From Dimorphilus gyrociliatus (taxonomy: Eukaryota > Animalia > Annelida), in NCBI GenBank assembly GCA_904063045.1, contig CAJFCJ010000029.1, positions 62,001-126,000 of the forward strand: DNA of 64,000 bases, given 5' to 3'. The notes below the pieces were generated by a model. It ran no database searches, was not told where the DNA came from, and saw only the letters and a program-made list of their open reading frames with translations. This document shows, piece by piece, positions 19,701-51,500 of this stretch. Numbering within the stretch: position 1 is the stretch's first letter; each line of letters opens with the position of its first letter. The translations under genes were made by a program, and so were the position numbers.

Positions 19701-22700
19701 TTCTGATATGTATACTCCCGAATATATTTTACCATCGTCTAAAGGTATACCTCCAGGAATTTTCAGTGTTTCTGATAATCTTTCTCTGGTAATTCTGCTT
19801 ATCTTTAATAATAATTTGTCTCCTTCCGCTTCGCCGTATTCCATCAATCGTATTTCTTGACAACTTTTAAGTTTGTTCGAAGAATCTTTTATAGGTCTAT
19901 ATTTATTGGGGCAAGAACAAGTATATGAACCCAATGTATTCGTGCATATTGTTGTTTTCGGACAGGGAGATTTTTTACATTCATCAATATCTGTACAATT
20001 TACTCCATCACCTTCAAAGCCACTTTTACAAACACACTTAAAGGATCCTAAAGTATTAAGGCAAAGACTATTTGGCGCTAAACAATCGTGTATCAATGTT
20101 TGAGGAGCCTCTTCTTCTGTACACTCATTTATGTCTCTACATCTTTGAAAAACGCCATTTTTCATTAAGGGTGTGAAACCATATTTACATTCGCATTTAT
20201 AATTCCTTCCTGTGTCTATATAAGAGCACATCCCATTGTCTTGTGTGAAACATGGATTCTTTTCACACCACTTTACTCTATTAGCTATACATGTGCCATT
20301 TCCAGTACAATTTTTATATTCAGCATAGGTTTTCCCTGGCTCTTTTTTACACGGTCTTCCACCGTTCTCTGGAGCCGGATTATTACATATAATTTCCCTT
20401 TTGCTATAGCCCATATCACAATCTGAGGAACATAAAGACCACGCTGTCCACTCGGACCATCCTCCATGAGCTATTTCGCATAAATTTCCTTCGTAGGTAG
20501 AATTAAAGCATTCACACTTAACACCGCTTCCATTTTCAGTACAATTTCCTCTCGAATTACAAGAGGTCGGTGTGCATTCTTTTATATCAGTACAATTAAA
20601 AGGATCTCCTTCAAAGCCAGGTTTACAAACGCAACTGTAGGAGCCAGAATTATCGACACAAGTTGAATTTTCTGTGCAATTATGCAAATTTTCAACACAT
20701 TCGTCTATATTTTCACACGAGTAAGTGTTTGCAGCAGGATTAAAATTCACTCTTCTATAGCCATCCTTACAACCACATTCATACGAGCCAATAGCATCAA
20801 TACATTTAGCATTTTCATGCTTCTGTTTACATACAGATTCGTAGAGAATACATTCATTATCATTTTGACAATCTCTTCCTCTTTGGATGAAACCTTTATT
20901 ACAAGTACATGTATAAGGTGAACCAGAATAGCTTTGTAAATTATAATTGGCATCTGTACAAGTTGAATTTACATGGCATTTGTGTAAATTTTGTGTACAT
21001 TCATTAACGTTTTCACCGCAATCGTATATTACTTGTTCCAAATCCAAGTTATTTATTTCATTCACCTCTGACACAACATTTAAAGCGTCTACAATTATAC
21101 CTACATAGGGTTTGTTCCAACAGAAATCAGATAGCGATCTTATCAATGGAATTTCAACAGATTTTAATTGGATTGTAGTTCGTAAGTTATTTTTAGATGA
21201 AATTTCCATTTGTTGAATTTGTAACGTATGATTTTGCACTATGATTGGATCATCGTTTGCCTGATAAACTTTATCGTTGGAAAAGATTAAACCAAACTTA
21301 AAGTTGACTTCATTGCCACTTTTTTCAGGCAATTTAAAAGAGCCTGTTGTTATTATTACAATCGTCATTTCAATATCAATTTTGTCGCCTGGTCTGATAG
21401 TTTTCTCTTGGATATTTAACAACTTTAAATCTTCTATAGATAAGTCAATTTTATCACCACAAACCGAAGAAATTGGTGCCAAGAAAGCATCCCACTCAAG
21501 CTTGTTATTCTTTTCATTCGTTTCCGCAAGGCTATGTCCCGAGTCTATTTCTATTTCCAATTTCGCAGATCTAACATTGCAAAGAAACAAATGATCTTCT
21601 TCCGTTAGGGTCAAACCTGGAACTTCTCTGGCGATGTAGACTGTAGTTGTTGCGGATACTCCCTTATTTATATCAGTAATCAAGTTTTGACTATTATATG
21701 AAATTTTTTTACGGATGTCTTTATGAGAAATGTAAAATCCGACAGTATATAGTAGAGGATCTGTTTGTCCACTAGGAAAGTTTCCCCAGCCTCCACTTCC
21801 ACTTATTTCAATAAAAGTTGTAATATTAAAACCCATATCGTGGTTGAAGGTATAATTATGACTGTATACATTATCTAACCACTTGAATGCTATTGGTTGT
21901 AAATCTCTCCAATGGTCTTGACAGTCAACTGCTATTTTAAATTCCATATGATTGTTGTTCATATAACATTCAGGTATTGATGGTGCAATAACTTCTAAAC
22001 CTAATATAAAATGTCCACTTCCTAGATAGGGACACACTATATTCATGTTAATATCTCCAACCCATTTAGGAGTTTCTACAGTTGTTCCCTGCTTAAAAGT
22101 GTTTAGGTATCTTCCATTTGGAAGCTTACTTGACCAAGAACTAGGAGTTACGTAGTATCTTTGTGAATTGACTTCGTCTTTTCTTATGTAAGCTCTCATT
22201 TCAAAGCTCGCCATATGCTTGAGTGGAACAATATCTTTATCGAATATGTTTTTGACTGTTGCAACAACGCTGATAGGTGAACCGTCTTTATAATACACGT
22301 CTTCCTTTTCCAGTTGAATATCAACCAAATAAAGAACATCACTGTGGCACTTAATATCAATCTCTATTGGATAGACGTTATTACCTTCGTCAAATTCTTC
22401 GATTATATTATTTTCATCCAGTACTATAAGGAGATAAGCTGGCCCACAAATTACTAATTTTTCTATTTGTAAATGTAAAGTTAGATTAACTTCTGTTGAT
22501 TTATCAAATTTTTTCATTAGTTTTGTTATATTATATTCATTTTTGACCTTATAACTTTCTTTTTCGTCAAATTTACTTGTTTTTGATAAAAAGCTATTAA
22601 TTTTCATATCTTTAGATTCAAGATCTAATATAGATATTCCAGTTACGTTAAGATTTACAGTTATTTCCGCAATTATTGTATGCGGTATAGAAAATTTATA

Positions 22701-25700
22701 GGTTGATAATAATGCATTATTAATATTTAAATCACTCTTATCAGTAATACATTTTACCATATTTGTAACGTTCAAGTAACGAGCATGGTTATCCCAGACA
22801 CCGTCCTTTAAAGATATTGGTAGACCGAATTCTGTTTGTGCAAATAGAATTGGCTGATCACAAGTTCCAAAGGGCAATTGTATAATAGCTTCTCCTTCCA
22901 GTTTAACAGTAGTTAAATGAATTAGAGAACCCATAAGAGTTTCTCTAAGTTTGTAATCCAAATATTTGATGTTAACCTTAGAATCATAGTCTTCCTTTAG
23001 ATTCTTTCCATTTGACATGTACATAGTTAGATAAAAATTCTCTTTTCCCTCTCCGGAAGATTTAACATCGTATGAGTAGTGAATGTTTTGCATAGTACCA
23101 CTAAACCAGATCTTTGTGTCGATTCCGCCGTATAAATGGGTAAAAGGTGGAAGAGGTTTAATTGTAAAACCGCCCATAGAGAACCAATCATTTGGACAGT
23201 AGACAGTTATTTTATTCGTAAATGTATTATTAGAACTATCCGGATCAATAGCACCTTCATAGCTGCTATTAATTCGAACGATTAGATAAGCAGTTCCGCA
23301 GTAATAATTTAAATTTGGAAATTTTAGAGTATTAAGGAGAAGTCCAGATCCGCTTAACGGGAATATATCGGGCGTTGAAGAGGATATGCCTTTTTGAAGT
23401 GTTGTTTTTTGTACAGTAGAATAGACGGTTGGTATCTGGTCGTCATATTCATCAATTGCTGAATCAATACTGATAAAAAATTCCAAATATATATAAGGTT
23501 CATCTCTATTTGGAATAGAACCAGTAGCGGATTTCTTTACTCCTATTTCCAAATTGTAACTGTTTATCGAATTTGCTGATATGTACGCTTTATTCTGACC
23601 ATTCGATTCTGTTAAACTAAACTTGGTTATATACAGATCCACTTGATTTGGGTATTTACAAATCAGTAGTTTTTTATCAACTGGAAATCTTGCAACATCA
23701 TTTTCAGTGATGTTAGATTTATAAGATCCCACCTGAATTAGTTGAATAAAAATAGTTGGATTTTTTGCTCTTTTGCATGATTCTACACTTTTTATAAGAA
23801 CATTTCCCTTAAGGTATCTATTAAATATTAGAGATCCGTACGCAACAGTATTCTTATATATATAGACTTCTCCTTCGTTATTTCTTATATCCATTTCTTG
23901 ATCTTGATCTTTATCAAATATCTCGTCCTCTGAAAAGTATTCTTTAAACGTAAAATGACCTTCCAGTGATGACTGAAGGGCGGGACCATCATTCTCAACT
24001 GAAAGAGACATAGCATGTTGAATGTATAATCCGGGATACCATTCCGATGGAAGATCTATAACTTCAAACGATCCTATAGATAAACCTTCATTTTCAGGGC
24101 AATAGATAAATATCGGTTTTATAAATGTTCCTCTTCTTACACTGTTATATTTTGAGGAGATTTCAACGGCCAATAAAGAAGATTCCATACAAATGATATT
24201 TTCAAATGGTAAAGTAACTTTATTTAATGAATTTAAATCTAAATTCATTATTGAAATACCAGAAGGATTTGAATATCTTGAATTAAGCGTGTTATTACTA
24301 TTCCCACTTGAGTATTTAATCGGAATTGTAAAGTTATCTTTGATCAAGGATAAAGATATCATTAGATTATCGGTTGAAGTTTTACCAGCGAGTATTAAAT
24401 TAGCGATAACAGATATATTGTATTCTTTAGTAGCTTCGACTATCTCGGGAAAATTTACAGATTTGATATCAGTTCCTATTCCAACTGGACAATTTTTTGT
24501 AATAATCTGATACGAATATTGATTATCATCCAAGTTGGCATCATAATATGCTGTTTCTATTTTAATGATTATATAACTCTGTGTACTATGGCATATATTT
24601 ATTAATGTTTCGTTGTCTAAAGCCGATGATTTTTCAACATTATATCGGTACAACATACCATCTTTAACCATAGAAATTCCTTTCGACTTTAATTTCAAAT
24701 TTAATTTAGTTTCTTTGCCAGAGATTGTATTAGTTGTAGAAATATAGAAATTTTGTTCTATACTTTCTTCCATAAATATATATTTACTTGTAAATCGATA
24801 AAAAATATCTATCATTGTAGTTTTACTGTTCAGATTAATAGTTTGTGGTGAAATTGTTAAGCTTTCAACCTTTATAGATGAATCTTCCTCTTCTACATCA
24901 AAATTAATAATAGATATATCATTCTCCTCAATTCCCCAATTTGCTCCTTTAACTTCGTCGCTATTTCCTTTCAGAAGTTTTAATCCTAGGAATTTTGTTC
25001 TAACATCATTAATAGTGATCATAAGGTTAGCTTCCATTGGCAATGAATTAGCTGTTGTAAAATTCCATTGTAAAGCTGTTGACGGTGATATATTCTCTTC
25101 ATTACCAGAAATATAAAATGGATCTATTAAAGATGGTTGAATACTTCCTACAGGTTTTAATTGACTGTCTAGGGGAATCAATTTTATATTGAAATGTACT
25201 GGGAAAGCAAAAGTTGAGCTGGAAGCCGTCGATAACGGACAAGGAGAAGTATTACAATTGATTTTGAAATTAAGTTTTCTGGTCTTCTGCTGATTCGCAA
25301 ACTGCATTGTGTTATCTAATTCTATATCTTGAATTTCAAATAAATCAATTCCACAATTGATTTTAATAGGATCAAATCTTATGTTATTTTCATAGTTGCT
25401 CTCCGTAAGTTCTCTTCCACTTTTCAGGACTGTTACTATATAAGAATTACCGCATAAGGTCTTATTTATATTAGAAGGAAGAGTGAGTGAAGAGGAAAAT
25501 GTCTCTGTCAGTGGAGAACTTCCATAATGGAGCATCTGAAGTTTATCAAAAGGTTTATCGTATGGTAGACTATTCGTTAGAGGATAATCAATCAGTTCAT
25601 CAAATTTTACATCTTTACTTATCCAATGGTTTATGATAATATTTTTGAAATATATACTTTGTCCAGTTTGCAATTTTATCTCATAGTTGATATTTAAACT

Positions 25701-28700
25701 ACTTCCGGGTGCTTTTCCCACGCCCGCATTGATATTGAACCCAGAACCAAAGTATAAATCAATTGGTGTCGGATAACAATGTGCATCCAAAGGAAAATGC
25801 TTAATAACTTTAAAGGGTAGAATAATTAAAAGTAAATAAGTATTAGCAGAACAAAATGAACTTGAAATTGTGAATTTTAGCTGTAAATCATCAAATTTAA
25901 CAATTCCTCTTGGGTTGATTCCCTGTTCAAGAACTTTTTTATTATAAGAGATAGATTCAATTTGAACATCATAATTTGGATTCCACTTGTAGTCGGCTGA
26001 CAAAAAGGCCACTAATTTTAGATTAAACAATTTTTCTTTAGATAGATTTATAATTGAACCGGAAAATGTCATAGTCTTTTCAGTATTTTGCCAAACACGT
26101 AAATCGTCGGGTGAAAACTTTTGAAACATAACCTTTTCTTTACATTTGATAAACACGGGTGTAAGTAGCTTCTTTTTAGCATTTATAGAGCTAGACACTC
26201 TCTTTGATGCATCAAATACAAGTATACCATAGATATTATCGCACATGTCAAGGCTACTAGGAAAAGTTGCTGTTCCCATCATTTCGAAAGAAGATCCTTT
26301 CTTCAAACCTAATTGAAGTTCGGAACAGATGTCATTTTTTAATAATACGGATCCCGCTGTTGCTGTTGCTAATTTTGAAAGTAGAAAATTGACAAAAATT
26401 GGTTCAGAATAGTTGAAAGATAATGGAAATATTTCGCCAGATGTTGATAATTTAAATGAATATTTAATTTCTGACCTATCATAATCTATGTTTAGAACGT
26501 TAAAATCCGAAATTAATACTTCGTTTTCCAGCTCCTCTTGACATTCAATCATAAAATGTCTTTCATTATTCTCAGCTACAGCATCTAACATTCCCGGCAA
26601 TGTTAGTCGTACGGTTAGAACATTTTCGCTACTACCTCCACAACCACCAGTCAATAGTTCAAAGTATTCGGATATAACAAACGTTTTTTCTTCTCCAAAC
26701 TTCATGTTTATATTTGACACTATCTCTTTATTCGATAAAAGAGAATAGGATGATGATTGAGCAAATGATTTACGTGTGAAAATGTCAAGTTTCAAACTTG
26801 GAATAACACAATTTCCAGTATTCATACATGCAAACGAAAACTCTATATTAACTTGAGTACGATAGCTTTCGATAAGTTTAGCATTTTCCAAATCTAATTC
26901 AACTGAGAATAAAGAAATAATATCGTCTTCGCAAATGATATTAATTTCTTGATCCTCTTGGTTATCATCTTCATTTATCTCTGAAACTGTTTTATCACTA
27001 TCTAGAGTACCAATCGCGTAAACTCTTCCGCATAAACTTCTCGGTAGTTTTTCTAAAGAATAGTCGCCACCTAAATCAAATAGCACTGAGCCTGTGGATA
27101 AAGCTTGAGGATTAGAGATTTCCATCCATTTCCATGTAGATTGATCCATAATAGAGTTAATTTGAGAAATATGCAAAGTATTTTTAAACGAATTGATAGC
27201 TAGATTAGCAGCCGACGCTAGACTTGCGTGACCGTTCCATTTAACATTTATCTGATCATTCTTATTTAAATAATTTGGAATGATTAGTTTGTCAATCAGT
27301 AAATTTACATTAGAGTTGGATGGTGTGCAAACTTTGATCGATTCTGGTATTCTTATGACTTGTTCGTTGTTATTAGGATTGTCAATTGATACTATTGTTG
27401 TTAGTTTTATTTTTAACTGAGTTGTGTAAGTACATATATTTTCTTGCCATTCATCAGGAGTAATTTCTACTATAACAGGATTAAGAACTCTCGTCGATAA
27501 ATGTGGAAATTTTTCGACGTTAACAGGAGGATAGTGTACAAATGTAGAGATAACTTTGTTAAATAATGCAGTCTCATTGAAAGCTATCACTTCTAAACGG
27601 TATGGATTGCTGCTTTCAAGAAGCATTTCATCGTTTACATTTTCAATAGCAATAGATAGCTTCAAAGTGGAAACTTCCCCGACTATCAATGTTCCGTCCA
27701 GAAGAGACGCTGAAGTTAGTCTTAGATAATCTTGTAAGAAAAAGGAATCATTATTAATAGATACGCTTTTCTATTGATATGAATGTTCAAAATTTACCTT
27801 GATTTGGTAAGGATAAGCTAATTTTTGAAACTGCAATATTATTCCCTTCATTAGTTTCCGCAATATCGTTATCAGCGTCAATTTTTGCAATGATATAAAC
27901 ATCTCCAGCGTATTTAACATCAGTATCGAATGGTATGGTTATCTGAGAGCCCTTTATGATAATAGTGTGTTCTCCAGGGCCATAATACTTTTGTAATTCA
28001 GCTAGAGCTTTTCCTTTGTTAAATCCATTGAAATTTAATAGCGTATCGCTACCATCAAGAATATTGTCAACCGATAAATACAAATTTGTTTTAGTTACTA
28101 TGGAACTGATGTTGGATGATTCAGGAACAGAAATTAACATAATCATTCCTATGTCTTGGGGTTTATCAGCGACAAGTAATCTTCCGTAGGTTTCCACCTT
28201 AAGAGCTTCAAGATCAACATTTGAATTAAAGCAACTAACAGTCGTTTTTCCATTTTGGCAAAATATATCGTTATTGGCGTTATTATCAGGAGAGAAACTA
28301 TGCTGAATACAAATTAAATACGTTGACGATGAGCATATTTCTTGCGTCAAAGATATTTCGAATAGTCCCGATAACTCAACACTCTGCTTGTCCGCAATGG
28401 GAGAGCGTAACTTTAATTTAGAAGCGGTTGTCCACGTGAATTCGTCGCTTGTAATTAAAATTCTTGAATCATCTCTAATAGATACTATGAACCTAACGGA
28501 ATCTGGCTGATAAGGCTCGGGTGCTGGTAAATCTATTCCTTTTACATCAAATGTCATATTTACGCCAACTGGTCCTTTTTCACTTTCGTATAATTTCTTT
28601 TTTTCAATTGAAACTGATTGAATACCAATATTAATACCACATCGAGTACTAATATTCCATTCTGTATAAATATCAACACATTTCATATTATCTTCATCCG

Positions 28701-31700
28701 TATCTCCAGCCAAATTAGTTTTAAGTGATAAGCAAATGTATCTTTTCCCTTCACAAACAGGATTCCAAAAAGTAAATTTTACTTTTGCATTACGAATAAC
28801 TCTGAGAGATGATTTAGGCCATGTTCCATTCAAATTTGCCTGAAAAATTTCAGTATTGTTCGGTATCTAGAAAAGAGAAAGAATTAATTTTAATAAAGAA
28901 TAATAATACAATAATTTTATAGGCTTACCAAAGGACTAGCGTCTATAATAGCTGGATTAATGGCTGATGTATTTACGTTATTTGCCAAAGTAAGAGTATA
29001 AGTTACTTCAACATCTTTGTCTGAATTTTCCAAACTTAGAGCGTCCAAATCGAAGGAAAGTTCATTGTTTGTAGGAAAAAGTGACCCTTTTATACGTAGA
29101 TCGGTAAGAACAATACCTGCTTGAGCGTCACAAATCATTTTAACACGTTTCCATAATATATTGTTCATGGTTGAAGTTTCAGTGACGCCATCATCGCTGT
29201 TTATTCGTACTCCCAACCAGAGTTTATCTTTTCCGCAAAAAGCATCGGGTGTAGAGATTGTAAAACTATCAATAATTTCTTGGTTGAGGTCGGGAAAGCT
29301 ATATGTTTTTGTTTGGTCGATTAGAACTCTTCTCTTATCAGTTGTTTTTTCATCAGTGATAAACAAGTTATACTTAAAAGATGCTGGACTAGAAACAGAC
29401 TTTGCTTTAATGATATCAAACATAATTTTGATTGAAGTAGTGGCAGATGATAAAAACTGATTTTGGTAAGGTTTATCGTCAATTATAATTAATTTTGGTA
29501 TCAAATCTAGACCAGTAGGACATCCAGTTATCTCAATATCATCTATTTCTTTCACATTATTTGAAGGATCAGCATCAGTAAAGGGCGTAACAATAGTAAT
29601 TTTAATTTTATTTCCTGTACCGCAAAATTGCAGATGATTTAAAGTGGTAAGTTTAAATTTACTCGTAAGAGATATTGATATGGATTTTAGATTATTCAAA
29701 TCAAAATAAATAGGAATGTTTATCTTTCCATCTGAATTTTCAAACGTTAAAATTGGTTGAAATGACCAATTCCAATCAATATCGGATTTACCAAGATTAG
29801 CTTTTAAATCAAGATTAAAAGTTTGTAAATCATTTAAGTTAAATTGAGTTTTATCAAGCGCAAATTTGGTTATTTCAAAATCAATTCCATTATTTCCCAT
29901 ACAATTGAAATAGTAAGTGTAAAAGTTATCTATTTCTTCGCATTCAGTTCCAATTGTATCTTTTACGCCAACCAATATAGCATCATACCCAACAGAACAT
30001 ATATCAATTGGAATTTTCACATATGTTTTAACAGTTGTAAATGTCTTATCTGTATTTGAATTATGAGCAGCTTTTCGGAGGTCTTTTTCACTTCCGCTAT
30101 AAGTCCAATCATCCGGAGTAATATCTAGTCGATTTTCATTCTTCATATGAGAAGACTTTTGAAGATAGACTTTAAATTTAAAATTAGTATTCATGCCCGA
30201 TACAGCAGCTATATTACTTCCGATATTTCTTACAACACCTCCAAAGGTTAACATTGTATTTATGTTTGAGAATAGATCTTTTGGTAAATTGAAATTGTTT
30301 ATCCTAAACACGTATTTGTCTATTGAAAAATGAAATAATTATCATAGAAAATAGATGGTTAAATAAATAAATATCTTACTATTTTCACTACATTGTATTA
30401 AGATTGAAAAGGATGCAATATTGTCTACTTTGTTTTTGTCGTCTATCGCATTATTAGGATCTATTTGAACGATTATATATTTATAACCGCAATAATGATT
30501 CCAAGTATCGTTGTTGATAGACAATTCTAAAGGTCCTTTTATATCTCCATTTCCCTGTTTTACTTGACTTCCAACCACAAAATTTAATTTTTTGTCATTT
30601 TCCTTATCAATTTTATTATCTTTAGCCAAATAAACATCAAAATCTTCATAAGTTGATCCGTCAATACCCTTTTTTGTTTTGGTTGTAATGACTTTAATTA
30701 AATTAATATTAATAATAAAACAAAATATTTACCGAAATTGTCAATTCAATATTTCCTGCCAGTTGATTTGATGGATTTAATGCAATCGAGTTTGAATCAA
30801 TTACAACAGAGATACCAGTTTCTTCTGAAGGATAGGAAGAGAAGAAATATTTAAGGAACATGGATAGCTATGAAAATATAGTTTATATATTACCTTTCGA
30901 ACAGGTGATTCCGGTAATTAAAGCTCTATTGTTATCAGTACTTGTATCAGAGAAACCGACTGGAACTCCCAATCCAGTCAATACTTTAACAGTAATATTA
31001 CTAAAGATGGATAAGTAATTATTATTATTATTGAACTTTTTGTTATAAAACTAATTAACCTGTTGATTTGAGCACAAAAAGCATCATCTATATCCAATGT
31101 TGCTTTAACTGTTATTTTAGCAGTATCTCCAAATTTCAGACCTGATTTAGCATTATTTGATATGAAAATAGATTCTGGAGTTTCACCTTCTATTTCAAAT
31201 GTAAACGGGTAATCTAGACTTTGAGGAATATCTCTACCCAAGAAATCAATATTGGTAACTTCAATCATAAACTCCAAATGCCTCTTTGAACCAGAATAAA
31301 CTTGAGTTGTTATCTTATCAGCATTGATCTTAATTATGTCACCAATACAAGAGACTGCTACATCTTTTACCAAATAATTATTACTTATATACGGATCTTG
31401 AGGAGAGTTTTCCGATAATAAATTCTCGATTATTTTACTACTAGATGGAGTTATTGGTTTATTCTTTTCGTCAAAAACAGCAACAATAATAGAATTTAAA
31501 CCGCAATACGTCCTCACATCACTAGAATTAACCATCAAATCAATTGTTGTAATTTCTGCCGAGTTATTTGTTACATCATTCTTTAACTCTTTATTAGATG
31601 GAGAATAGGCTGAAATAATTGATTGAATAGTAAAACAAAGGGAAAGAGTTGGTTGTCCTAAAAGTAAATATAATAAATCAACTTACGAATTTCATAAGCT

Positions 31701-36473: not shown

Positions 36474-36483
36474 AATTCAAGTT

Positions 36484-36492
36484 AAAATGGCG
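36484..36492. promoter_or_regulatory. YY1-like AAAATGGCG within the 117-bp bidirectional promoter of the giant pair
   Basis: Match to the YY1 core consensus; motif inference only. Confidence 0.4.
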
Positions 36493-36590
36493 ATTGTACC
36501 ATTTACAGACAGCATGAATAAGTTAAGGCTCTAGCAACGACGTATGGGCGCTCTCTATATTGTGAAAATTATTCAGCCATTCAAGCCATC

Positions 36591-42500: not shown

Positions 42501-45500
42501 ACAATCAAATTACTCTTGACCAACCAAAGAAGTTTGTGCTACGTCTTGCTATTGATGCAGCTGGCAGTATGAAAGTTAAACCATTCGCTATTAAATTAAC
42601 ATTATCTGATGGATTGAATACAGTTAATATTCCATTAGGTCTAGATATAATTGACATTAAGGATACATTGACCGACACAAAAGAATTAAACTTTGATGGC
42701 TCATTCACCTTAGAGCCTGGCAAATATTTACCTTTTTGCAACAGTGACTTAACATTAAAGTTATCCATTGATCCGAACGATGAGATAAATGAATGGAATG
42801 AACATAACAATGATTTTATAATACAGCAAGTATCCGTTGTTGGAACTTTCTGTAACTCAGACTTGGATCTTTCTGTTGAGGATCTTGAAATGATAGACCT
42901 TGATGAGAATATTATTCTCCAAGACCAAGCATTCGATTTTTACTTTACATTTAATATAAACAAGCCTGGAGCGTCGACGGCGCCAGATCCTTCCAGTTTT
43001 AAATATAAATTAGTTATTGCTGATAGTATGAAGAATGACGGAAAAACTGTAACTATTTCTGATCAAACATACTCTAGCTTAGGTACAAAGAAAGTGGAAG
43101 CTTCAGTCACATTGTCAATGTCTGGTGGCGGGGATACTGTTCAAAGATGGTTTTGTGGGTTAGTTGTTTACATGGGTGTGAATATTAATTACGACGAAGC
43201 GATAACGGAGCCTACTTATACTAATAATTGGCTATGGAAACCAGTAAGAGTTAAATGCCCATCGATAAATACTATAGCCATTGTGGGTCTTCAACTTACC
43301 GGTAGTGACCAACCTGGAAATACAATACCTGAAGGTCAGAGTACTACAATAACTTTTGATGCAAAAGTTTTAAATAAGGGACAAGAAAAGAATGCCGGAT
43401 CGAATCATTTCGACTATAAAGTCTATCTTCTGTCGTCTCTAGTTAGCGATTTAAGTAGCGGTTCTCCGGGAGACGCCTCGGCAGTAATAGCAAATGCACC
43501 TGGAAGAGATGTAAAATTTTATAGTGGTCAAATTATTGAGCATACAGCAGTAACAGCAACATTTACGATTTCATCTTCAAATTGTATAACAACTAATTAC
43601 TTATGTATTGAAGCGTCTAATGTGGGTGATGAACAGAAAGAGGACAATTTCAAATGCATTTCTGTATCAGGGAATGAAAAAGTTAATTTGGACTGCAAGA
43701 GAGATATTAGTATTACGTCATTGACTGTGAAACCGCAAAAGCCTTTAAATAAAATCTATCGAGATTCTTTATCTCCGTTAAGCTTCTCACTTACTATGGG
43801 CTTTACTGGTAGGACTGTGGAAAGTGATTCAGAAACTCTTGTGTCTTTTGAAGCATACTTAAGCGATCGAAATGACATTATTCCAACAAGTGGATATAAG
43901 CAATTGATAGGAGAATCTAAGGGATTAACATACACTCAATCAACAACAACAACACTTACATCACAAATAACCCACGGTGATTCAAATAGTATAGGAGGAG
44001 ATATTAGAATAATGATACCTTCTGCAAATTGTTCAACATCAAGTAGATTCGTTTGCTTAAAATATAAAATAACTAGACAATTGAATCCGCCATTTGACGA
44101 TAGTAATTCGGGCAATGATGCAACATGCAAATCTTTAGGAGAGCATTTACAATGTGACGACGAAAGTAAAGATATAAGTCCTTCTTGGTTGAATTTTCCT
44201 GATGTCTTAATTACTGCTGGTGGTAAACATTCTTTTGAGTTATTTGTTGACGTGGAACTTAGGGGATCGGCCAATTCAGAAAACATAATCTTTGATGGAG
44301 AATTCTTCCTGTCTACCGATGACAAATTTGACAATGGAACTGATATTCTCCTGCCTTACGATGGTTTATCATACGGAATGGCTCGTTTAGAGATGATGAG
44401 AACCTACAAGACTCCTGGAAAATATACCATGAATCTAAAAAGTTCCAAATTGTCAATACCCAATTCAATATCAATTTGTGGCGAGAGCTATATACTATTT
44501 TTGGCTGATACATCCAACACAATCAGTGAAAGATATGAGGATAATAATATGATTAGCACAAAGGTAAGAACGTCTTGCGTTGGAGACGTCTATGAGGTGG
44601 TCGATTTCAAAATTTCGAGTATGGAAGATATTTATATTGGCATATCAACAACAGTAACATTTAACTTTAAAATAAGAAATATCAGTCCAAAAACTTTAAA
44701 GAAAACATCTTCTCTTTCTTTAGATAGATTAATAAGAGTTTTTGTTATGGATAGCCTGCTGGATTCATCTCCCTACGTTGTAGGCGAGATTGAACTTCCC
44801 AGTGAGTTTTATAAAGAGATAAAGCCAGGAGAACTCTTAGAAGTAGAAGGTGCAAAAACGTTTTTCTCCTCGGACAATACAGTATTCACATTAGCAAAAT
44901 GTAATAGCTTCAACGGTTTGTTATTGTATGTGGCTTCATCTACAGAAACTTATAAACTGAATAACCAAAAGTTTATCTCAATTGACCTATCATTGAAACG
45001 CTGTTCTGTATCGTCAACGTCGTTGAGAGACGTTAAGTTAATTGACATTGAATTACCACAGATATTACCAGTTCCAGGAACTTTTAGCAGTTGGCATATA
45101 ATCGCTACGAATGTCGGCTCAGCAAGTGCCGCAATAACAGAAAAAGGGTTTACGTCTACTTTTTATGTTAGTAACGGCAAATCTTCCATTAAAATAGCAG
45201 ATTTATCTAATTCGATTTCGACGTCTAAAGGAGAACAAAAGGAAGAGTTAGTTTTTAACAAAGATACAAAAATAAAAGCTTTTACCGATAAATCATATTG
45301 CGGTTACGTAACTGCTTATATAATGACTGATTCTGAAAATGATATTACAGAAAAGAGTGAAGAAAATAATAAAATGTCAACAGAAATTCTAACTGCATGC
45401 GAAGGGGATTTTTTCTCATTATCACACCTTGATCTTGTTTCAAACAGACTATCAGAATCAAACGAATTACCTTTAATTTTTTTCGTAAAGGTTATTTGCT

Positions 45501-48500
45501 TGAAATCATCTTGCATGATAGGATCGTCGGATGAAAATATAAAGTTTAACATTTATGTTTTAAACTCTACTAGTGGTTGGTCTCACTTACAAACTATTGA
45601 CAAAAACTCTACAGTTTATCCTCATCTGGGCGTCACCTTTAAACGTCAAGGTTATGAGAGGACATTTCACGTTAAAAGCAAAGCAAAATTACCAATGGAT
45701 ACTTGTAATAATAGTATTGCAAGACTGAAAATTCAATTAGACTTTGGAAGTGGTTTACCAGGAAAGATGGATAATGTTACAGAGAATAATAATATTTATA
45801 CACAAGTTGAATGCGCATCGTCCAATAGAGACTTAATAGCAACGAATTTTAAGATATTGGATGAAAATCCTTTAAAAAGTAGGCGAATTAAATACCAAGT
45901 TGATATAAATTTAGAAGGAGAAAAGCTTGATGCTATCGATCCATTAGGCATAGCTCCGCTATTCAATATAGGTCTTTATGTATCAAGAGATAGACTTTTA
46001 TCAAAAGATGATATACGAATGGACTATATTATGTCAGAATGTGCAGCCAGGACAATAAATAAAGGAATTTCGAACGAAACTATAACTGTTACGGATGCAA
46101 CTGATGGTGCAATTTTACCTGAATCAGTTTGCGGTTCCACAAATATTATCATAAAAATAGACAGCGATGACCGATACAACGAACTGAATAAGGTTAACAA
46201 TGTTTTATATAAAAAAGTTGATATAAATTGTGAGGGAAATTTATTCGAATTGATAGATGTCATATCTGATCAATTCAATGAACCACTTCATCAATTTACT
46301 TCCGGAATGAGCTATTCGTCGTGGAAATTTGATGTTATTTTAAGAACTAATAACTACGATATCTATTCTCCTTATCGGGAAACTGGAGAACCTCTTTTAA
46401 CCATTATATCAGCTTTTTCAGCTGATTCGGAGTTTTCCGACGACGATATTCAGATCCCAGTCACTATGAGTGATATATCAAAACGACTTGTATCGTTTGG
46501 TCTGTTACCAAATACGGAACTTAGATTGCCATTAAATGAACTTTCTAATATTAATATACCAGCTGATATTTGTGCCTCAATTAATTATTTACTTATTGGT
46601 ATATTGCCCTCTAAAAATCAACTAATACTAGAGAAGAAGCTTGATAACAATTTCCATTATTACCCGATTAAGAAATTATGCAATCCTGGCCAGAAAGTTA
46701 TGGCAGATACTATAAGTAAACCTGTATCAATCTCAAACCTTGATCAGCTATACGAATTTGCTGCTATAGTTAGAACATCGTTCGCTTCAGCTACTACGTT
46801 GAAATACGGTTGGTGGATATCCCACGATGATAAACTGCAAGATAATTTAGATTTTAATCTGGAGTATGGAAAAGTATCTGCAATTGGAGATATACTTTTC
46901 ACGAAGAACGTTACAGTACCTGGTCGAATTGCTCCAAAATTTTGCGGAAAAGTTTACATCCTTTTCCAGGTTGATCCTCATGATGAAATAATTGAGGTAA
47001 GAGAGGATAATAATGTTGCTAGCAAATTGATAAAAGTTAGCTGCAGTGGTGATTTAATAACTTTAAGGGATGTTAAATTGTCCTGGATCAGTAATGAACT
47101 ACTTGGAAGTGCTTCAAATAGTTTAACTATAAATGGAACTATTGAATGCACCGGTCAAAGTAAATGTCCTAACGCACCTCTTTCTGGAGATCATTACAAG
47201 ATAAAACTGCACGCTTACGATTCAAGCTTTAATATTCTTTCATCTCTCAGTCCTTCTTTCTTGCAATCGTCGATGCTTCAACCTTCTGATCTACTTACTA
47301 AAGATTTTTCTACTGGTACCATCGTTTATAGTTTTACCGCCAACAGTAAATTTCAACTCAGCAATCCGTCAATAAGCGATCTTGTGGAATATATTGGAGT
47401 TAATCTGGAAACTGATCAAACAACTGTCGGACCATCAGATGCTAAATTACGCTTAATACCTTTTAAATATTATAAAGAAGTTGGTTCAGTAGATTTTAGC
47501 ATAGATACTTTTACAGTTGCACCACAGAGTGGTGACGTCACAAAGGTAATCAATATGAATTTAATTGTTGGAGTTGCAACCTCTATGTGGAAAGACGAAA
47601 TTACCGAGCCCTTATTTGGTTACAGTCTCTACCTTTCACTTGATTCCGTTATTACTAGTGATGATATTAACATTAATTATGTCCCAAGTGAGGCTATAAT
47701 TAAGAATTTAGTAACATCTTCACCCACAGTAAATCTTGCTGATCCTTCAATTAAACTTAATACTGACATAATTCAGAGCTTTTGCGGAAAAGAAGTCTAT
47801 TTCGGTGTTATCATAGACCCGGCAAACAGAATTAAAGAATCGGATGAAACTAATAACTTTGCATCTGTTAAAATTACAATAACGTCGTGCGATAATGGAG
47901 TTACGTCTTATGTCAAAAGCATAAATTATCTTCCCTCCTGGGTAGTATCATATCAAGCCATAACAGCAAATTTTCTCGTAGAACATGTTCTAACAGGAAC
48001 GTTAGATATTCCGGCTGCTGTTGATGGTAAAGTTAATTATAAGCTAAACTGTGAATTGTTAGAGGATATTTGGTCATCAAAACATAAATTTAGCTTTAAA
48101 ATTGACACTTCGTCAATAAGTCAAACAAAAGAGCAAATTACTTCCGGTGCAAATATAGATAATGGTATTGCTGTTTTAGTTCAACACTCTTTTCCCTTTA
48201 CATTTAATATTGCCCCAAACTATTCAATTTGCGGTAGATTATGGATGATCAAGTGGCAAGTTGAATTTCTTACGAATACCCTAAGCTCAAAAAAAGTTGT
48301 TCTACCTCCTTATTATGATAACATATTCATATCATGCCCTCAAGGGGATTTGTTAGTTCTTGAGAGTATCGATATTAAACATACCCCGCCACTGTGGTGG
48401 TCTGATTCAACAAACTATTTTAAATTTATAGCCAAAGTACGAAATATTGGAACAAACGCGGCCGATGCAATAGCCGAATCGTCTGGATCAAGAAAATATA

Positions 48501-51500
48501 GTTTCATGATTGAACAATATTTTTCAATAGATGATTCTCTAGATACGCAACAAGACACAAAACAAGATGTTCGCCTCCCGGGAGATTATATACACGATTA
48601 TGAGAAATCAGTAGAACCTAAAGAAGAAGTTGTAACCCCAGTTCTAACCGGATATTTGAAGGATTTAAGTCGAGATCTATGTAAAAGTGCTCAATTAGAA
48701 ACTTCTAAACCAACTATTTTTTGGGTTATGAAACCGGCGTCTGCAACTTATTCAACATTTACTTTTAACGACGTCTTATCAGCGCCTTTAGATAAATCAA
48801 TATTTACTTGTGAACCCGATAATATTGATTTAGCAGTCACGTCATTAAAAATTGGCGGCTTAAATACAAAAATAAGACAAAGTATTGCAACTAACTATAG
48901 AGTAGAGATTTCTCAATCAAAGACTGCAGAAGCAGAAATCAAACGATCAGACTATTCGGGAAATGAATTAAGTTATAGATATGATTTCTATCTATCGAAT
49001 GATGATAAATTTTCAAAGGACGATTTAATACTACCAATTGAATATTCTAAGGAACAAAAGGTAACACTACAGCAAGGAATCTCCTCGGCCACTCCATCGG
49101 TAATACCGATAGATGGTTATAATTTTGTTGTTCCTAAAGATAGAGCCTTTTTTTGCGGAAAATATAACTATGTGATTGTCTATGTAAAAGACTTAAAGAA
49201 TCCTATTGAGCTTGATCCAAACCTTCATAATAATTGGAAAGCAACTCAAATAGAAATCGAGTGCCAAGAAGACCTTTTGACATTTGACTCCTTACAAATG
49301 ACGCCGGTTTGGCCTCAAAAAATGCTTTATAGAGATGCTTGGGCAAAGTTTCAATTGTCTGCTACTATAACTAGTTTAAAAGATATACCAAGTTCCGTTG
49401 ATGAGCGTGAATTGTTTACATTTAAAATATATCTCTCTGAAGATGGCATCTTAGATACATCTAACGACCCCGAACTGGAAATGAAGCTCGAAGATGATAT
49501 TTTTGGCATACGCAGAAAAGGTTGGCAAGCCATGGAAACAAGGAGCTTCCGGGAAACTGTCAGCATTAAGGCTTCTCAAGCTATTTGCACATTCAGACCG
49601 CAATTTCTTTTCGTCTATCTTGTGAAAAACGCTCAAATTACCATACAAGAATATGTCACAGAGAATAATGCACAGTATATTCCCTTTAGCCTAAACTGCC
49701 AGGTGAAACGTATCGAATTGAGTGCCAAATCATTTACTTTAGTTAATCCACAAGCAGTTTACACAACGGGAAGCGAAACTAAATATACATTATCTGTTTC
49801 TATTCATCTCGATGGAGGAGCAATTCTCGAACCTTTATTTAAATTGAGAAAAGGATTTAATATTAAATTCTATCTATCGACCAATACCAGCTGGGAGCAT
49901 TCAGATTATCCATTAGACTATACAATGACGGATGATAATTATGATAAATTAAAAGCTAGCTATAAAGTATCAACTGATTTATCATTCGATGCCGACGATA
50001 CTCATAAACTAAAAATTCCTGTCACTTTACCACCAAGATTCTGTGGATCAGTTTATCTTATTGTTTTTGTAGATAATGAGAATCAAATTGAAGAAGCAGA
50101 TGAGTCAAACAATTTCAAAGAAATTCCTATTTTTATTGATTGTATGGGTGATGAATTCGAGACCAGAAATTGGAAAATATGGCTACAACAGGTTTATTAC
50201 GGTGCACCCGGATTAATTAAAGTAGAAACTGATGTTAAATTGAAAACTGCAAATGTAAATAAGACAAACTTCGATATTACTGTGTGGGTAAGGGAAAATA
50301 AAGAGTCTGTTTGGTTAGAAGTCACCCCAAGCGATTGGGAAAGCGTTAACACAGATAATTACGATACTAAATCTATAAAGGGAAATCTTGACTTTAGATC
50401 TGCCTGCAAAGCAGATGTTGATAAGATAACGAACGGGTTAAAAGAAGTGAAAATTGAAGCTAGCTACAATTTGTCCTTGTCGAATTGCGTAGGCAAAAAT
50501 AATCGGGCCTATAGGCTGGCAAACGTCGATTGCTCTGGCGATTATATAGACTTGTCAATCGACGACTTTTCTTTAAGCAGTACTTTAAATTTTGGATATA
50601 ATCCCTTCATTCTTGTATTTAAAGCAGATTTGAGCTCTCCTTCGGTTGGTTGGGATGCCATGTCGGCTTTATCAAGACCTAAATTTAAATATAGGTTTAA
50701 AGTTGAATCAGTTTTAGAATGGATTTATTTAAGGCATGTTGCCGACACAAGACTAGATAAGAAAAGACTAGTAACTGAAGAGAGATACATAAAATACAAT
50801 GCAACAAAACATAACTCGATAATTAACGAAGCTACTAAAGAGACAAGATTAATGAATGTTTCCGATAATAATTTACAATTTAATCATGATGAACTATTAC
50901 TATTGTGCCACGCTATTTCGTCAAAGCTTTCAGTTCACGTTGACTCAGAAGAAGATATTAATGAAAGCAGCGAATCGAATAATATTGGTTCTTTAAATGT
51001 AGTTGTTAATTCATCACATTGCTTTGATGGTCCTCCTGCGAAGGACGTAACCGTTAGGGCATGGAAAATAAAGGCTACGAATGACGTTATGAAAGTTAAT
51101 ACGAACTATAATTACGACTTAAAAATACTATTAATTCTCGTAAAACCTTTACATCTTGACGGATTAAACGGAACCGACTCCACACACATGAATATTCAAT
51201 TTTTCATAACCGATGGAAAAAGTTCAGTGGATATCCCAGTCACTTTGTCTTCTTCGCAATTAGACGCTTTAAAAGCTTGGTACTGGAACATTTCCATAAT
51301 TGACATGTCCGATTCGAATCTTAAAATTCCATTGAATAATGAAACTTACAGATGGTGTTGGAAACCGGTTCAGATAGGAATAAAGCTTGACAGCTCAAAT
51401 AAACAAATTGAAGTAAATGAAGATAACAATGAGGGTTTTTACAGTGTCATCTTAGACTGCGGATCTAAAATAAACGAATGCAATTTAGGACTCCATAACT

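What the first reader, a model, noticed from the sequence alone, without database searches (positions are those of the whole stretch)
21015..51465. Arrays of prokaryote-style CARDB-like repeats in animal proteins, 'eukaryotised' with cysteines
Seen: ~130-145 aa repeats, ~33 counted in B and about 30 in A. They carry [YF]LSxDxx[FL]DxxD (e.g. YLSVDNILDGSDTLL, FLSTDDKFDNGTDILL) and CGxxY[IL]xxxxDxxNxIxExxExNN (e.g. CGKAYIFVEIDSSNGIQETDETNN). From memory these match the CARDB (PF07705) signature of bacterial and archaeal giant surface proteins, here with added Cys. They occupy the place where MUC4 has its PTS mucin repeats. Inference: an ancient horizontally acquired or rarely retained Ca-binding adhesin module replaced the mucin domain.
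Basis: partly seen in the sequence, partly recalled or inferred. Interest (0 to 1): 0.85.

Follow-up and report, generated by a model that had tools for sequence, protein, structure and literature searches.

The report
Giant animal proteins with CARDB-type repeats
Two neighbouring worm genes encode giant membrane proteins whose outer part is a chain of about 30 domains of a kind otherwise found almost only in bacteria; matching genes with matching introns in another annelid and in amphioxus show it is an old animal gene, not a recent bacterial import.

Summary
Genes A (minus strand) and B (plus strand) lie head to head. Each encodes about 30-33 tandem repeats of about 140 aa; a self-built profile finds 55 copies, and its outer limits (21012, 51466) match the finding.

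The repeats are CARDB-type:
- Pfam PF07705 scores 101.8 bits on B's large exon.
- The AlphaFold model has pLDDT 94, and its best solved matches are the Pyrococcus CARDB domain.
- The motif columns are shared with about 1,480 prokaryote-type repeats.
- Two cysteines are near-universal in the animal repeats and absent from the prokaryote-type ones.

The genes are real. RNA contigs confirm eight GT-AG introns, and dN/dS is about 0.1 against a 67%-identical orthologue.

The transfer idea is not supported for any recent date. Owenia (annelid) and Branchiostoma (amphioxus) have the same design: repeat array, EGF, TSP1, NIDO, AMOP/VWD, EGF array. In both, phase-1 introns bound the repeats, and 12 of 17 Owenia introns coincide with amphioxus introns (0.5 expected by chance). 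The gene therefore predates the protostome-deuterostome split and was kept in few lineages. A much older transfer remains open.

Calcium binding is untested; only 13 of 55 repeats keep the full acidic motif. I found no paper describing this. The scan noted CARDB-like modules once before in this genome, on a cadherin gene.

The parts
21012..35490 (-). Gene A: array of about 31 CARDB-type repeats. 26 were detected, and gaps fit more. It spans several exons plus the first 2253 codons of the 12.3 kb exon.
   Evidence: Self-built profile; Pfam CARDB 30.5 and 27.7 bits on exons 33037-35556 and 27790-28866.
27731..33047 (-). Gene A introns confirmed by RNA contigs: 27731-27797, 28867-28928, 30320-30379, 30668-30731, 30825-30893, 31610-31686, 31921-31993, 32974-33047. 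All are GT..AG and 60-77 nt long. Most are phase 1 and lie at repeat ends.
   Evidence: Joints with CT..AC ends on the plus strand; phases worked out.
13800..21011 (-). Gene A C-terminal half: EGF modules, TSP1, NIDO (19104-19715), an AMOP/VWD-like region (VWD start motif GSMH at 18629), about 20 calcium-binding EGF modules, TSP1, transmembrane helix (14208-14282) and a cytoplasmic tail.
   Evidence: Pfam; colinear paralogy with gene B, 32-37% identity, E 2e-103 and 8e-154; transmembrane helix read from the sequence.
35557..36590 (.). Shared intergenic region of about 1 kb between the two diverging genes. It is a probable bidirectional promoter and may hold short first exons.
   Evidence: Layout of the open frames. 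The promoter role is inferred only.
36591..36650 (+). Candidate first exon of gene B with a signal peptide (MIRWRMESCFIIFCCLHLVFG).
   Evidence: Open frame with ATG and a hydrophobic core; the splice was not confirmed.
36723..51466 (+). Gene B: array of about 33 CARDB-type repeats. 29 were detected. Exons are 36702-37166, 37210-37698, 37791-40109, 40138-41181 and the first 3381 codons of exon 41324-51910.
   Evidence: Self-built profile; Pfam CARDB 101.8 bits; AlphaFold model of 49715-50149 with pLDDT 94; dN/dS 0.10 against the orthologue.
51467..58495 (+). Gene B C-terminal half: 3 EGF, EGF, TSP1, EGF modules, NIDO (52773-53270), AMOP (53562-53774), VWD in two halves around an intron (53832-54068 and 54140-54382; start motif GMSH at 53838), a weak MUC4-type C8-3 match, about 14-20 calcium-binding EGF modules, TSP1, transmembrane helix (58298-58363) and a short tail.
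   Evidence: Pfam; sequence.

Best explanation
Genes A and B are old paralogues. Each encodes a giant type-I membrane protein of the MUC4/Mesh/SUSD2 kind, with a NIDO-AMOP-VWD core, long calcium-binding EGF arrays, TSP1 modules, one transmembrane helix and a cytoplasmic tail. Their N-terminal ectodomain is not a mucin domain. It is a chain of about 30 folded beta-sandwich modules homologous to the prokaryotic CARDB domain.

Each animal module is about 20 residues longer than the prokaryote-type one. Each has two added cysteines, placed just before the sixth strand and just after the seventh, so they most likely form a disulfide that staples the hairpin carrying the conserved D..N...E..E.NN loop (inferred from the model's strand register, not measured). 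Modules alternate between a type that keeps the prokaryotic acidic/Asn motifs and a type that has lost them.

Shown here:
- homology to CARDB;
- transcription and splicing of gene A;
- purifying selection on every repeat of gene B;
- the same whole architecture in Owenia and Branchiostoma;
- repeats bounded by phase-1 introns;
- intron positions shared between annelid and amphioxus.

The gene with its array therefore already existed in the last common ancestor of protostomes and deuterostomes. It has been inherited vertically and was lost or diverged beyond recognition in most lineages whose proteins reached the list.

Inferred: the array forms a long, semi-rigid rod that projects from the apical cell surface. 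It could be well over 100 nm long if each module spans 4-5 nm. It would act as a spacer, barrier or adhesive filament, doing with folded domains what membrane mucins do with glycosylated PTS repeats. The subset of motif-bearing modules may bind calcium.
For: - CARDB homology: Pfam. The model has pLDDT 94.1. Best solved matches are 3idu and 2kl6, the CARDB domain of P. furiosus PF1109: Foldseek E 6e-5 to 9e-5 and VIA-align Z 8.8 and 8.4. AFDB cluster matches with TM 0.6-0.7 are CARDB, APHP and DUF11 proteins. The atlas search returns CARDB families only. The shared motif columns are Y51 L52 S53 D55 D59 D62 P98 G107 Y110 D116 E123 E126 N128 N129.
- Animal-specific cysteine pair.
- Real, expressed, constrained gene: spliced RNA contigs. 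The orthologue P0001 is colinear and 67% identical, with dN 0.23, dS about 2.3 (saturated) and ratio about 0.1. Orthologous repeats are 46-80% identical, against about 20% between repeats of one protein. The gene A orthologue lies in the same run.
- Same architecture elsewhere: Owenia P0010 has the array, EGF and TSP1, and NIDO-to-VWD matches follow colinearly downstream. In Branchiostoma, the model that starts 2 nt after P0027 carries EGF_CA, TSP_1 and NIDO, and B. lanceolatum has EGF and TSP1 downstream of P0155.
- Introns: phase-1 introns lie at nearly every repeat boundary in both taxa. 12 of 17 Owenia introns in the aligned parts coincide with amphioxus introns within 1 residue and in the same phase; 0.5 are expected by chance, and 0 of 5000 shuffles reach 12. 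The window's own introns are mostly phase 1 at repeat ends.
- Single origin not rejected: the tree with all animal repeats held together is 17.5 log-likelihood units better than the free quick tree, p-AU 0.72.
- Membrane topology.
Against: - No functional data exist. Rod shape, surface location and calcium binding are all inferences.
- Only 13 of 55 detected repeats keep at least 7 of the 8 acidic/Asn positions, and 18 are degenerate, so a cadherin-like calcium site at every junction is unlikely.
- The two-repeat model has only pTM 0.67, and its second (type II) module has pLDDT about 65, so rigidity is not supported by the model.
- The structural match to CARDB stands only slightly above generic E-set folds: Spo0M Z 8.3 and NPC2 Z 8.1.
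- VWD falls below Pfam's cut-off in both halves, and gene A's AMOP/VWD region is recognisable only through its paralogy with B.
- The census of animals is incomplete. Only the best 150 of 7,140 profile hits could be seen, and the word-indexed searches were nearly blind at this divergence. 'Rarely retained' could therefore partly be a search artefact.
Confidence: 0.75

Rival explanations
1. Ancient horizontal transfer. A CARDB module or array passed from a bacterium into the animal stem lineage, or earlier in holozoans, before the bilaterian ancestor. It then gained phase-1 introns and the cysteine pair, and was shuffled into a MUC4-like gene. This adds to the best explanation rather than excluding it.
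For: The family is overwhelmingly prokaryote-type: 7,140 profile hits, and of the 150 seen only 5 are animal. Atlas and AFDB neighbours are bacterial or archaeal CARDB. No reviewed protein in Swiss-Prot comes close; the best E is 1.4e-3, from generic folds. Sequence motifs, not just the fold, are shared with bacteria. Animal repeats can form one clade.
Against: There is no positive evidence of direction or date. The tree is unresolved: none of the 57 inner branches of the 60-row tree is well supported, and the larger 166-row tree has only 1 of 161. No donor clade was identified. The patchy distribution could reflect vertical descent with loss or divergence. Non-bilaterian animals and unicellular relatives could not be surveyed.
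Confidence: 0.35
2. Recent or lineage-specific horizontal transfer into this annelid, or bacterial contamination of the assembly.
For: It rests only on the prokaryotic look of the motifs and on the very long intron-free exons.
Against: The repeats lie in the same exons as EGF and NIDO modules. GT-AG introns are confirmed by RNA. GC content matches the flanks. Orthologues with shared introns exist in Owenia and Branchiostoma. The cysteine pair is absent from all prokaryote-type repeats.
Confidence: 0.02
3. The repeats are a generic immunoglobulin-like (E-set) domain of animal origin, and the resemblance to CARDB is convergent or trivial.
For: Structural scores against CARDB are only slightly above those for other E-set folds. 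Pfam aligns mostly the last third of its model. Sequence matches to solved CARDB chains are weak, E 0.1-0.6.
Against: Pfam scores are far above the cut-off, and CARDB is the only family hit. Fourteen motif columns spread over the whole domain show the same preferred residue as in about 1,480 prokaryote-type repeats. The window-derived profile retrieves thousands of prokaryote-type arrays at E down to 1e-165.
Confidence: 0.05
4. Decaying or non-functional repeat DNA: pseudogenes, or open frames kept by chance.
For: Many repeats have degenerate motifs. One RNA contig differs from the genome by a frame-breaking base.
Against: Open frames of 3,529 and 4,097 codons run without a stop. The dN/dS ratio is about 0.1, with a one-to-one repeat correspondence to the orthologue. 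Spliced RNA is present.
Confidence: 0.01

Closest known systems
Prokaryotic CARDB domain arrays (Pfam PF07705; solved examples 3idu/2kl6 of Pyrococcus furiosus PF1109 and 2l0d of Methanosarcina MA_4588; the named cyanobacterial protein P0066 of Gloeothece verrucosa)
   Same: Homologous beta-sandwich module with the same motif columns (YLSxD..D..D, G..Y, D..N...E..E.NN). It occurs as long tandem arrays in giant extracellular proteins.
   Different: The animal modules are about 20 aa longer, with a short helix after the fourth strand. They carry a conserved cysteine pair that the prokaryote-type repeats lack. They alternate with a motif-poor type. They are bounded by phase-1 introns and fused to EGF, TSP1, NIDO, AMOP and VWD modules.
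MUC4 (vertebrate membrane mucin)
   Same: Type-I membrane protein with NIDO, AMOP, VWD (plus a weak MUC4-type C8-3 match), EGF modules and a very long N-terminal repetitive ectodomain.
   Different: There is no PTS mucin domain: S+T+P is 21.5% and only 22 N-glycosylation sequons occur in 3,298 aa. Folded CARDB-type repeats stand in its place. There are many more EGF modules, plus TSP1 modules. The GDPH motif at the VWD start, which from my own knowledge is the autocleavage site of MUC4 and SUSD2, reads GMSH or GSMH here.
Drosophila Mesh / vertebrate SUSD2 (other NIDO-AMOP-VWD membrane proteins)
   Same: The same NIDO-AMOP-VWD core on a single-pass membrane protein. From my own knowledge, Mesh is a junction and surface protein of gut epithelium, which suggests an epithelial surface role here.
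   Different: As far as I know these proteins have sushi domains and no long N-terminal array. No CARDB-type repeats have been reported for them.
Cadherin and ADGRV1 (Calx-beta) ectodomains
   Same: Works-like comparison only: long chains of beta-sandwich modules with acidic/Asn motifs, which in those families bind calcium and stiffen the chain.
   Different: These are unrelated families. Pfam gives no cadherin or Calx-beta match. Calcium binding is untested here, and most repeats lack a complete motif.

Membership tests
CARDB (Pfam PF07705) | Score above the family's gathering threshold (22.7 bits) | tested here: met
   B large exon 101.8 bits. A exons 30.5 and 27.7 bits. The first repeat alone scores 25.5 bits, and 11 of 30 single repeats match at E<=0.01. 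The A large exon alone scores 18.1 bits, below threshold. Alignments mostly cover model positions 55-100 of 101.
CARDB (Pfam PF07705) | Family motif columns over the whole domain (YLSxD..D..D; G..Y; D..N...E..E.NN) | tested here: met
   The same preferred residue appears in the window, Owenia, Branchiostoma and 1,482 prokaryote-type repeats at 14 columns. Within the window, 13 of 55 repeats are complete, 24 partial and 18 degenerate.
CARDB (Pfam PF07705) | Seven-stranded beta-sandwich closest to solved CARDB domains | tested here: met
   The model has pLDDT 94.1. 3idu and 2kl6 rank first by Foldseek and by VIA-align, Z 8.8 and 8.4. The margin over other E-set folds is small.
CARDB (Pfam PF07705) | Metal-ion binding, as in the 3idu crystal (di-metal complex) | not testable with these tools
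   No model coordinates or binding assay were available. Only motif conservation could be scored.
MUC4 / Mesh / SUSD2-type NIDO-AMOP-VWD membrane proteins | NIDO domain | tested here: met
   A 86.4 bits and B 92.3 bits, against a cut-off of 25.
MUC4 / Mesh / SUSD2-type NIDO-AMOP-VWD membrane proteins | AMOP domain | tested here: met
   B scores 30.5 bits against a cut-off of 25. A gives no Pfam hit, but it aligns colinearly with B across this region at 32% identity, E 2e-103.
MUC4 / Mesh / SUSD2-type NIDO-AMOP-VWD membrane proteins | VWD domain | tested here: inconclusive
   B has two halves either side of an intron, at 19.5 and 15.6 bits, each below the 22.9 cut-off. A C8-3_MUC4 match scores 12.7 bits. 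The Owenia downstream model carries a weak VWD.
MUC4 / Mesh / SUSD2-type NIDO-AMOP-VWD membrane proteins | GDPH autocleavage motif at the start of VWD (known for MUC4 and SUSD2, from my own knowledge) | tested here: not met
   The equivalent residues read GMSH in B (53838) and GSMH in A (18629).
Membrane mucins (MUC4 as a mucin) | PTS-rich, heavily O-glycosylated tandem-repeat domain | tested here: not met
   The array is made of folded domains and its S+T+P content is 21.5%. It should not be filed as a mucin.
MUC4 / Mesh / SUSD2-type NIDO-AMOP-VWD membrane proteins | Single C-terminal transmembrane helix with a cytoplasmic tail | tested here: met
   Hydrophobic helices at 14208-14282 (A) and 58298-58363 (B), each followed by basic residues and a tail. 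This was read from the sequence; no predictor was run.

The most novel reading that the evidence does not exclude
A bacterial CARDB adhesin module entered the animal lineage before the bilaterian ancestor. There it was turned into a typical animal shuffling module, with phase-1 introns and a stapling disulfide, and was expanded into a rod of about 30 domains on an ancestral MUC4/Mesh-type surface protein. That ancestral giant protein survives in only a few lineages (annelids and cephalochordates so far). The mucin domain of vertebrate MUC4 would then be the later replacement, not the other way round.
Probability: 0.3. Interest if true: 0.7.

Novelty: new variant of a known kind. Interest (0 to 1): 0.55.

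Why it matters
CARDB is treated as a domain of bacterial and archaeal surface proteins. In the paper library I found no article describing it in animals; 17 papers mention the domain and all of them concern prokaryotes or mention it only in passing.

This work shows an animal-type version with a diagnostic cysteine pair. It forms the bulk of a giant, conserved, expressed membrane protein that dates back at least to the bilaterian ancestor.

That has three uses:
- It gives a clean, testable case of how a 'prokaryotic' extracellular module behaves once it is in animal genes (phase-1 exon module, added disulfide, alternating super-repeat).
- It adds a member to the small set of ancestral bilaterian surface and matrix proteins missing from the standard model organisms.
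- It offers a folded-domain counterpart to the mucin domain of MUC4-type proteins, which bears on how that family evolved.

It also corrects the tempting reading of such motifs as evidence of recent gene transfer.

Tried and rejected
- Word-indexed protein searches were close to blind at this divergence. B's large exon found only the 67% orthologue. Owenia P0010 found only itself and one B. lanceolatum protein. A four-repeat alignment found nothing. These blanks say little about distribution.
- The AU test on the full 166-row repeat tree did not finish in three runs of 288 s each. I replaced it with a 60-row subset from which the 12 long-branch rows that the first tree's printout named (of 18 it counted) were left out.
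- The repeat tree itself is unresolved and gives no donor clade.
- Naming the prokaryotic neighbours mostly failed. Only P0066 carries a name, Gloeothece verrucosa. The AFDB rows came without organisms.
- Hit A0A2G8JWI2 may, from my memory of the accession series, be a sea-cucumber protein. I could not check this and did not use it.
- Sequence search against solved structures gave only weak matches, E 0.06-0.9.
- Contamination, pseudogene and convergence readings were considered and rejected (see rivals).
- I could not measure the Cys-Cys distance or locate the acidic loops in three dimensions, because model coordinates are not returned. The disulfide is inferred from strands 111-119 and 134-142 forming a hairpin with Cys110 and Cys143 at its base.
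- The first exon and start codon of gene A were not found.
- I did not verify the species name. It comes from earlier notes of this scan.

Full report
**What is in the window**

The region is AT-rich (GC about 0.30-0.35) and its composition does not break from the flanks. Two very large open frames diverge from a gap of about 1.1 kb. On the minus strand, 15480-27770 is open for 4,097 codons. On the plus strand, 41324-51910 is open for 3,529 codons. Chains of further open pieces lead back towards 35556 and 36702. The short gaps between pieces carry GT..AG boundaries of about 50-90 nt. I call the minus-strand gene A and the plus-strand gene B.

**The repeats are real**

I seeded a profile with nine copies from B and iterated it against all open pieces. 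It converged on 55 copies of about 120-150 aa, 26 in A and 29 in B. Copies lie back to back with 2-10 residues between them. Where a gap occurs it is about 150 aa, the size of one diverged copy. The outermost copies end at 21012 and 51466, matching the finding's coordinates.

In an alignment of 30 copies, mean identity is only about 22%. The Cys of CGxxY and the NN pair are nearly invariant.

**The repeats are CARDB-type**

- Pfam gives CARDB (PF07705) as the only family on the repeats. B's large exon scores 101.8 bits (E 2.6e-29, 7 stretches). Two A exons score 30.5 and 27.7 bits. A's large exon scores 18.1 bits, below the 22.7 cut-off. Eleven of 30 single repeats match at E<=0.01. The alignments mainly cover the last half of the Pfam model.
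- An AlphaFold model of repeat 49715-50149, using the 30 copies as its alignment, is confident (pLDDT 94.1, pTM 0.87). It is a seven-stranded sandwich with one short helix.
- Its best solved matches are the CARDB domain of Pyrococcus furiosus PF1109 (3idu, 2kl6), both by Foldseek (E 6e-5 to 9e-5) and by VIA-align (Z 8.8 and 8.4).
- The margin over other E-set folds is small (Spo0M 8.3, NPC2 8.1), so structure alone would not decide the matter.
- AlphaFold DB clusters give CARDB, APHP and DUF11 proteins at TM 0.6-0.7. The language-model atlas returns CARDB families only.
- In Swiss-Prot nothing comes close; the best E is 1.4e-3, from generic folds.

The strongest argument is column by column. 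I aligned 40 window repeats, 8 Owenia repeats, 25 Branchiostoma repeats and 1,482 prokaryote-type repeats to one profile. The same residues are preferred at Y51, L52, S53, D55, D59, D62, P98, G107, Y110, D116, E123, E126, N128 and N129.

**The cysteines**

In that same alignment, Cys occupies state 106 in 95-100% of animal repeats and 0% of prokaryote-type ones. Cys occupies state 139 in 68-100% of animal repeats and 1% of prokaryote-type ones. Animal repeats are also longer, with a median of 146-153 aa against 126. Among the 150 best database hits, only the animal proteins have the pair.

In the model the two cysteines sit just before strand 111-119 and just after strand 134-142. These two strands form the hairpin that carries the D..N...E..E.NN loop. 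A disulfide stapling that hairpin is therefore likely, but it is inferred; no coordinates were available.

The repeats also alternate. Type I keeps the acidic motifs. Type II keeps both cysteines and the NN pair but lacks the acidic loops. This alternation is seen in the window, Owenia and Branchiostoma alike. A two-repeat model gives the same strand order for type II, with lower confidence: pLDDT about 65 and pTM 0.67.

**The rest of the proteins**

After the array both genes continue with the following modules:

- EGF modules, a TSP1 module and further EGF modules;
- NIDO (86 and 92 bits);
- AMOP (30.5 bits in B);
- a VWD split by an intron (19.5 and 15.6 bits, both below the cut-off), with a weak MUC4-type C8-3 match;
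- some 14-20 calcium-binding EGF modules and another TSP1;
- a transmembrane helix and a cytoplasmic tail.

A and B are colinear paralogues through all of this, at 32-37% identity with E 2e-103 and 8e-154. The core is therefore of the MUC4/Mesh/SUSD2 kind.

It is not a mucin. The array has 21.5% S+T+P and consists of folded domains. The GDPH motif known from MUC4 and SUSD2 reads GMSH or GSMH here.

**The genes are expressed and under selection**

Contigs of a public run lie on 27700-33100 with eight joints. All have CT..AC ends on the plus strand, meaning GT..AG introns of 60-77 nt on the minus strand. Most are phase 1 and fall just after the last Cys of a repeat.

A 67%-identical, colinear orthologue of B (P0001, 3,469 aa) and an orthologue of A's first exon (P0148) both come from one other sequencing run.

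Across B's large exon dN is 0.23. dS is about 2.3 and saturated, so the ratio of about 0.1 is rough. Each repeat has its own orthologue at 46-80% identity, while repeats within one protein share about 20%. The copies are therefore old, individually maintained, and not homogenised.

**Where else the module occurs**

A profile of the 30 repeats, scored against 1.84 billion representative proteins, gives 7,140 hits at E<=1e-3. I could see the best 150. By cysteine content, signal peptides and Pfam, nearly all are prokaryote-type arrays. I infer this rather than having it from taxonomy; only P0066, from the cyanobacterium Gloeothece verrucosa, is named.

The animal-type hits are P0001 and P0148 (the close relative), P0010 from Owenia fusiformis, and P0007 and P0027 from Branchiostoma. 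P0155 from B. lanceolatum was found later. A protein with five well-matching repeats scored high enough to be listed (P0148, rank 148). Proteins with long arrays of this kind from other animals should therefore have appeared, but fragmented gene models or more diverged repeats would not.

**Vertical descent**

- Owenia's P0010 ends with the same EGF-EGF-TSP1 stretch as the window genes. Matches to NIDO through VWD follow colinearly downstream in its locus.
- In Branchiostoma the gene model that begins 2 nt after P0027 carries EGF_CA, TSP_1, NIDO and many EGF_CA modules. In B. lanceolatum, EGF and TSP1 follow P0155.
- In both taxa the array is broken into two or three exons per repeat, and nearly every repeat boundary carries a phase-1 intron.
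- P0010 and P0155 align colinearly in three blocks. In the best block, eight Owenia introns face eight amphioxus introns with the same order of phases, apart from the first.
- Overall, 12 of 17 Owenia introns coincide with an amphioxus intron within one residue and in the same phase. Five of them are inside repeats. By chance 0.5 would coincide, and 0 of 5,000 shuffles reach 12.

This is what descent from an intron-rich gene in the common ancestor of protostomes and deuterostomes looks like.

A maximum-likelihood tree of repeats is unresolved. Holding all animal repeats together gives a better likelihood than the free quick search (p-AU 0.72). Repeats of the three animals are intermixed, as expected if the array diversified before the lineages split.

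The CARDB call, made from memory, was right, and so was the remark on the cysteines. The placement relative to the NIDO-AMOP-VWD core is right, with EGF and TSP1 modules in between.

'Horizontally acquired' is not supported at any date that can be examined. Within Bilateria the gene is vertical. 'Rarely retained' fits the hits I could see. An older transfer stays open: the family is overwhelmingly prokaryotic and the motifs are well kept, but no donor, date or direction can be shown.

'Calcium-binding' is untested. Only 13 of 55 repeats keep at least 7 of the 8 acidic/Asn positions, 24 are partial and 18 are degenerate.

**How it most likely works**

This part is inferred. The protein would be a type-I surface protein that holds a chain of about 30 disulfide-stapled sandwich modules away from the membrane, on top of a NIDO-AMOP-VWD core and a long EGF stalk. 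It would be a folded-domain counterpart of a membrane mucin's extended ectodomain, serving as spacer, barrier or adhesive filament on an epithelial surface. A subset of modules could bind calcium.

I put 0.75 on the overall explanation. Most of the uncertainty lies in the function, not in the identity or the history.

**Literature and earlier notes**

Full-text searches found 17 papers mentioning the CARDB domain. None describes it in animal proteins. Apparent animal hits were the unrelated CARD domain, or were about bacterial teneurin-like proteins.

Earlier notes of this scan name the organism as the annelid Dimorphilus gyrociliatus. One unchecked note reports CARDB-like modules on a giant cadherin elsewhere in this genome. 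I did not verify either.

The single read-laying run used 5,401 letters.

Noticed in passing
window 15480-27730 and 41324-51910, against L005 and L006: Intron loss looks biased towards the 3' end. Both genes keep short introns between repeats only in their 5' third and then run as single exons of 12.3 and 10.6 kb. The Owenia and amphioxus orthologues have two or three exons per repeat throughout.
   Followed up: partly
window 31785: The RNA contig has one extra A in an A5 run inside exon 31687-31920. It would break the reading frame; the genome version is open. This is probably a contig or sequencing error, or a polymorphism.
   Followed up: partly
window 30958-31138 and 32949-33100: Depth in the RNA contigs spikes to 30-40 against about 5 elsewhere, and there are loose ends at 31001 and 33075. 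This may reflect alternative 5' exons, another transcript or a repeated sequence.
   Followed up: no
window arrays; P0010, P0007, P0027, P0155: The repeats form a two-module super-repeat in which motif-rich and motif-poor types alternate. The pattern is conserved between annelids and amphioxus.
   Followed up: partly
L008 1-3448 and L006 1-8638: In Branchiostoma the gene models upstream of the array also carry faint CARDB matches, one of them together with a WSC domain. The amphioxus locus may therefore hold an even larger gene, or several tandem genes of this kind.
   Followed up: no
P0143 (metagenomic, prokaryote-type): All 7 repeats of this protein have a Cys at profile state 139 but none at state 106. 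It is a different, independent cysteine variant of the domain.
   Followed up: no
window 36591-36650 and 35490-35556: Gene B has a candidate signal-peptide exon starting at ATG 36591. Gene A's first large exon begins with a hydrophobic leader but has no in-frame ATG, so a short upstream exon is probably still unrecognised.
   Followed up: partly
window 37950-38160 (residues 54-123 of piece 37791-40109): A Pfam Lyx_isomer match of 22.1 bits (cut-off 20.8) falls on a diverged repeat, with no stretch passing on its own. It is most likely spurious.
   Followed up: no
If true, the module was shuffled into a second gene family.
   Followed up: no
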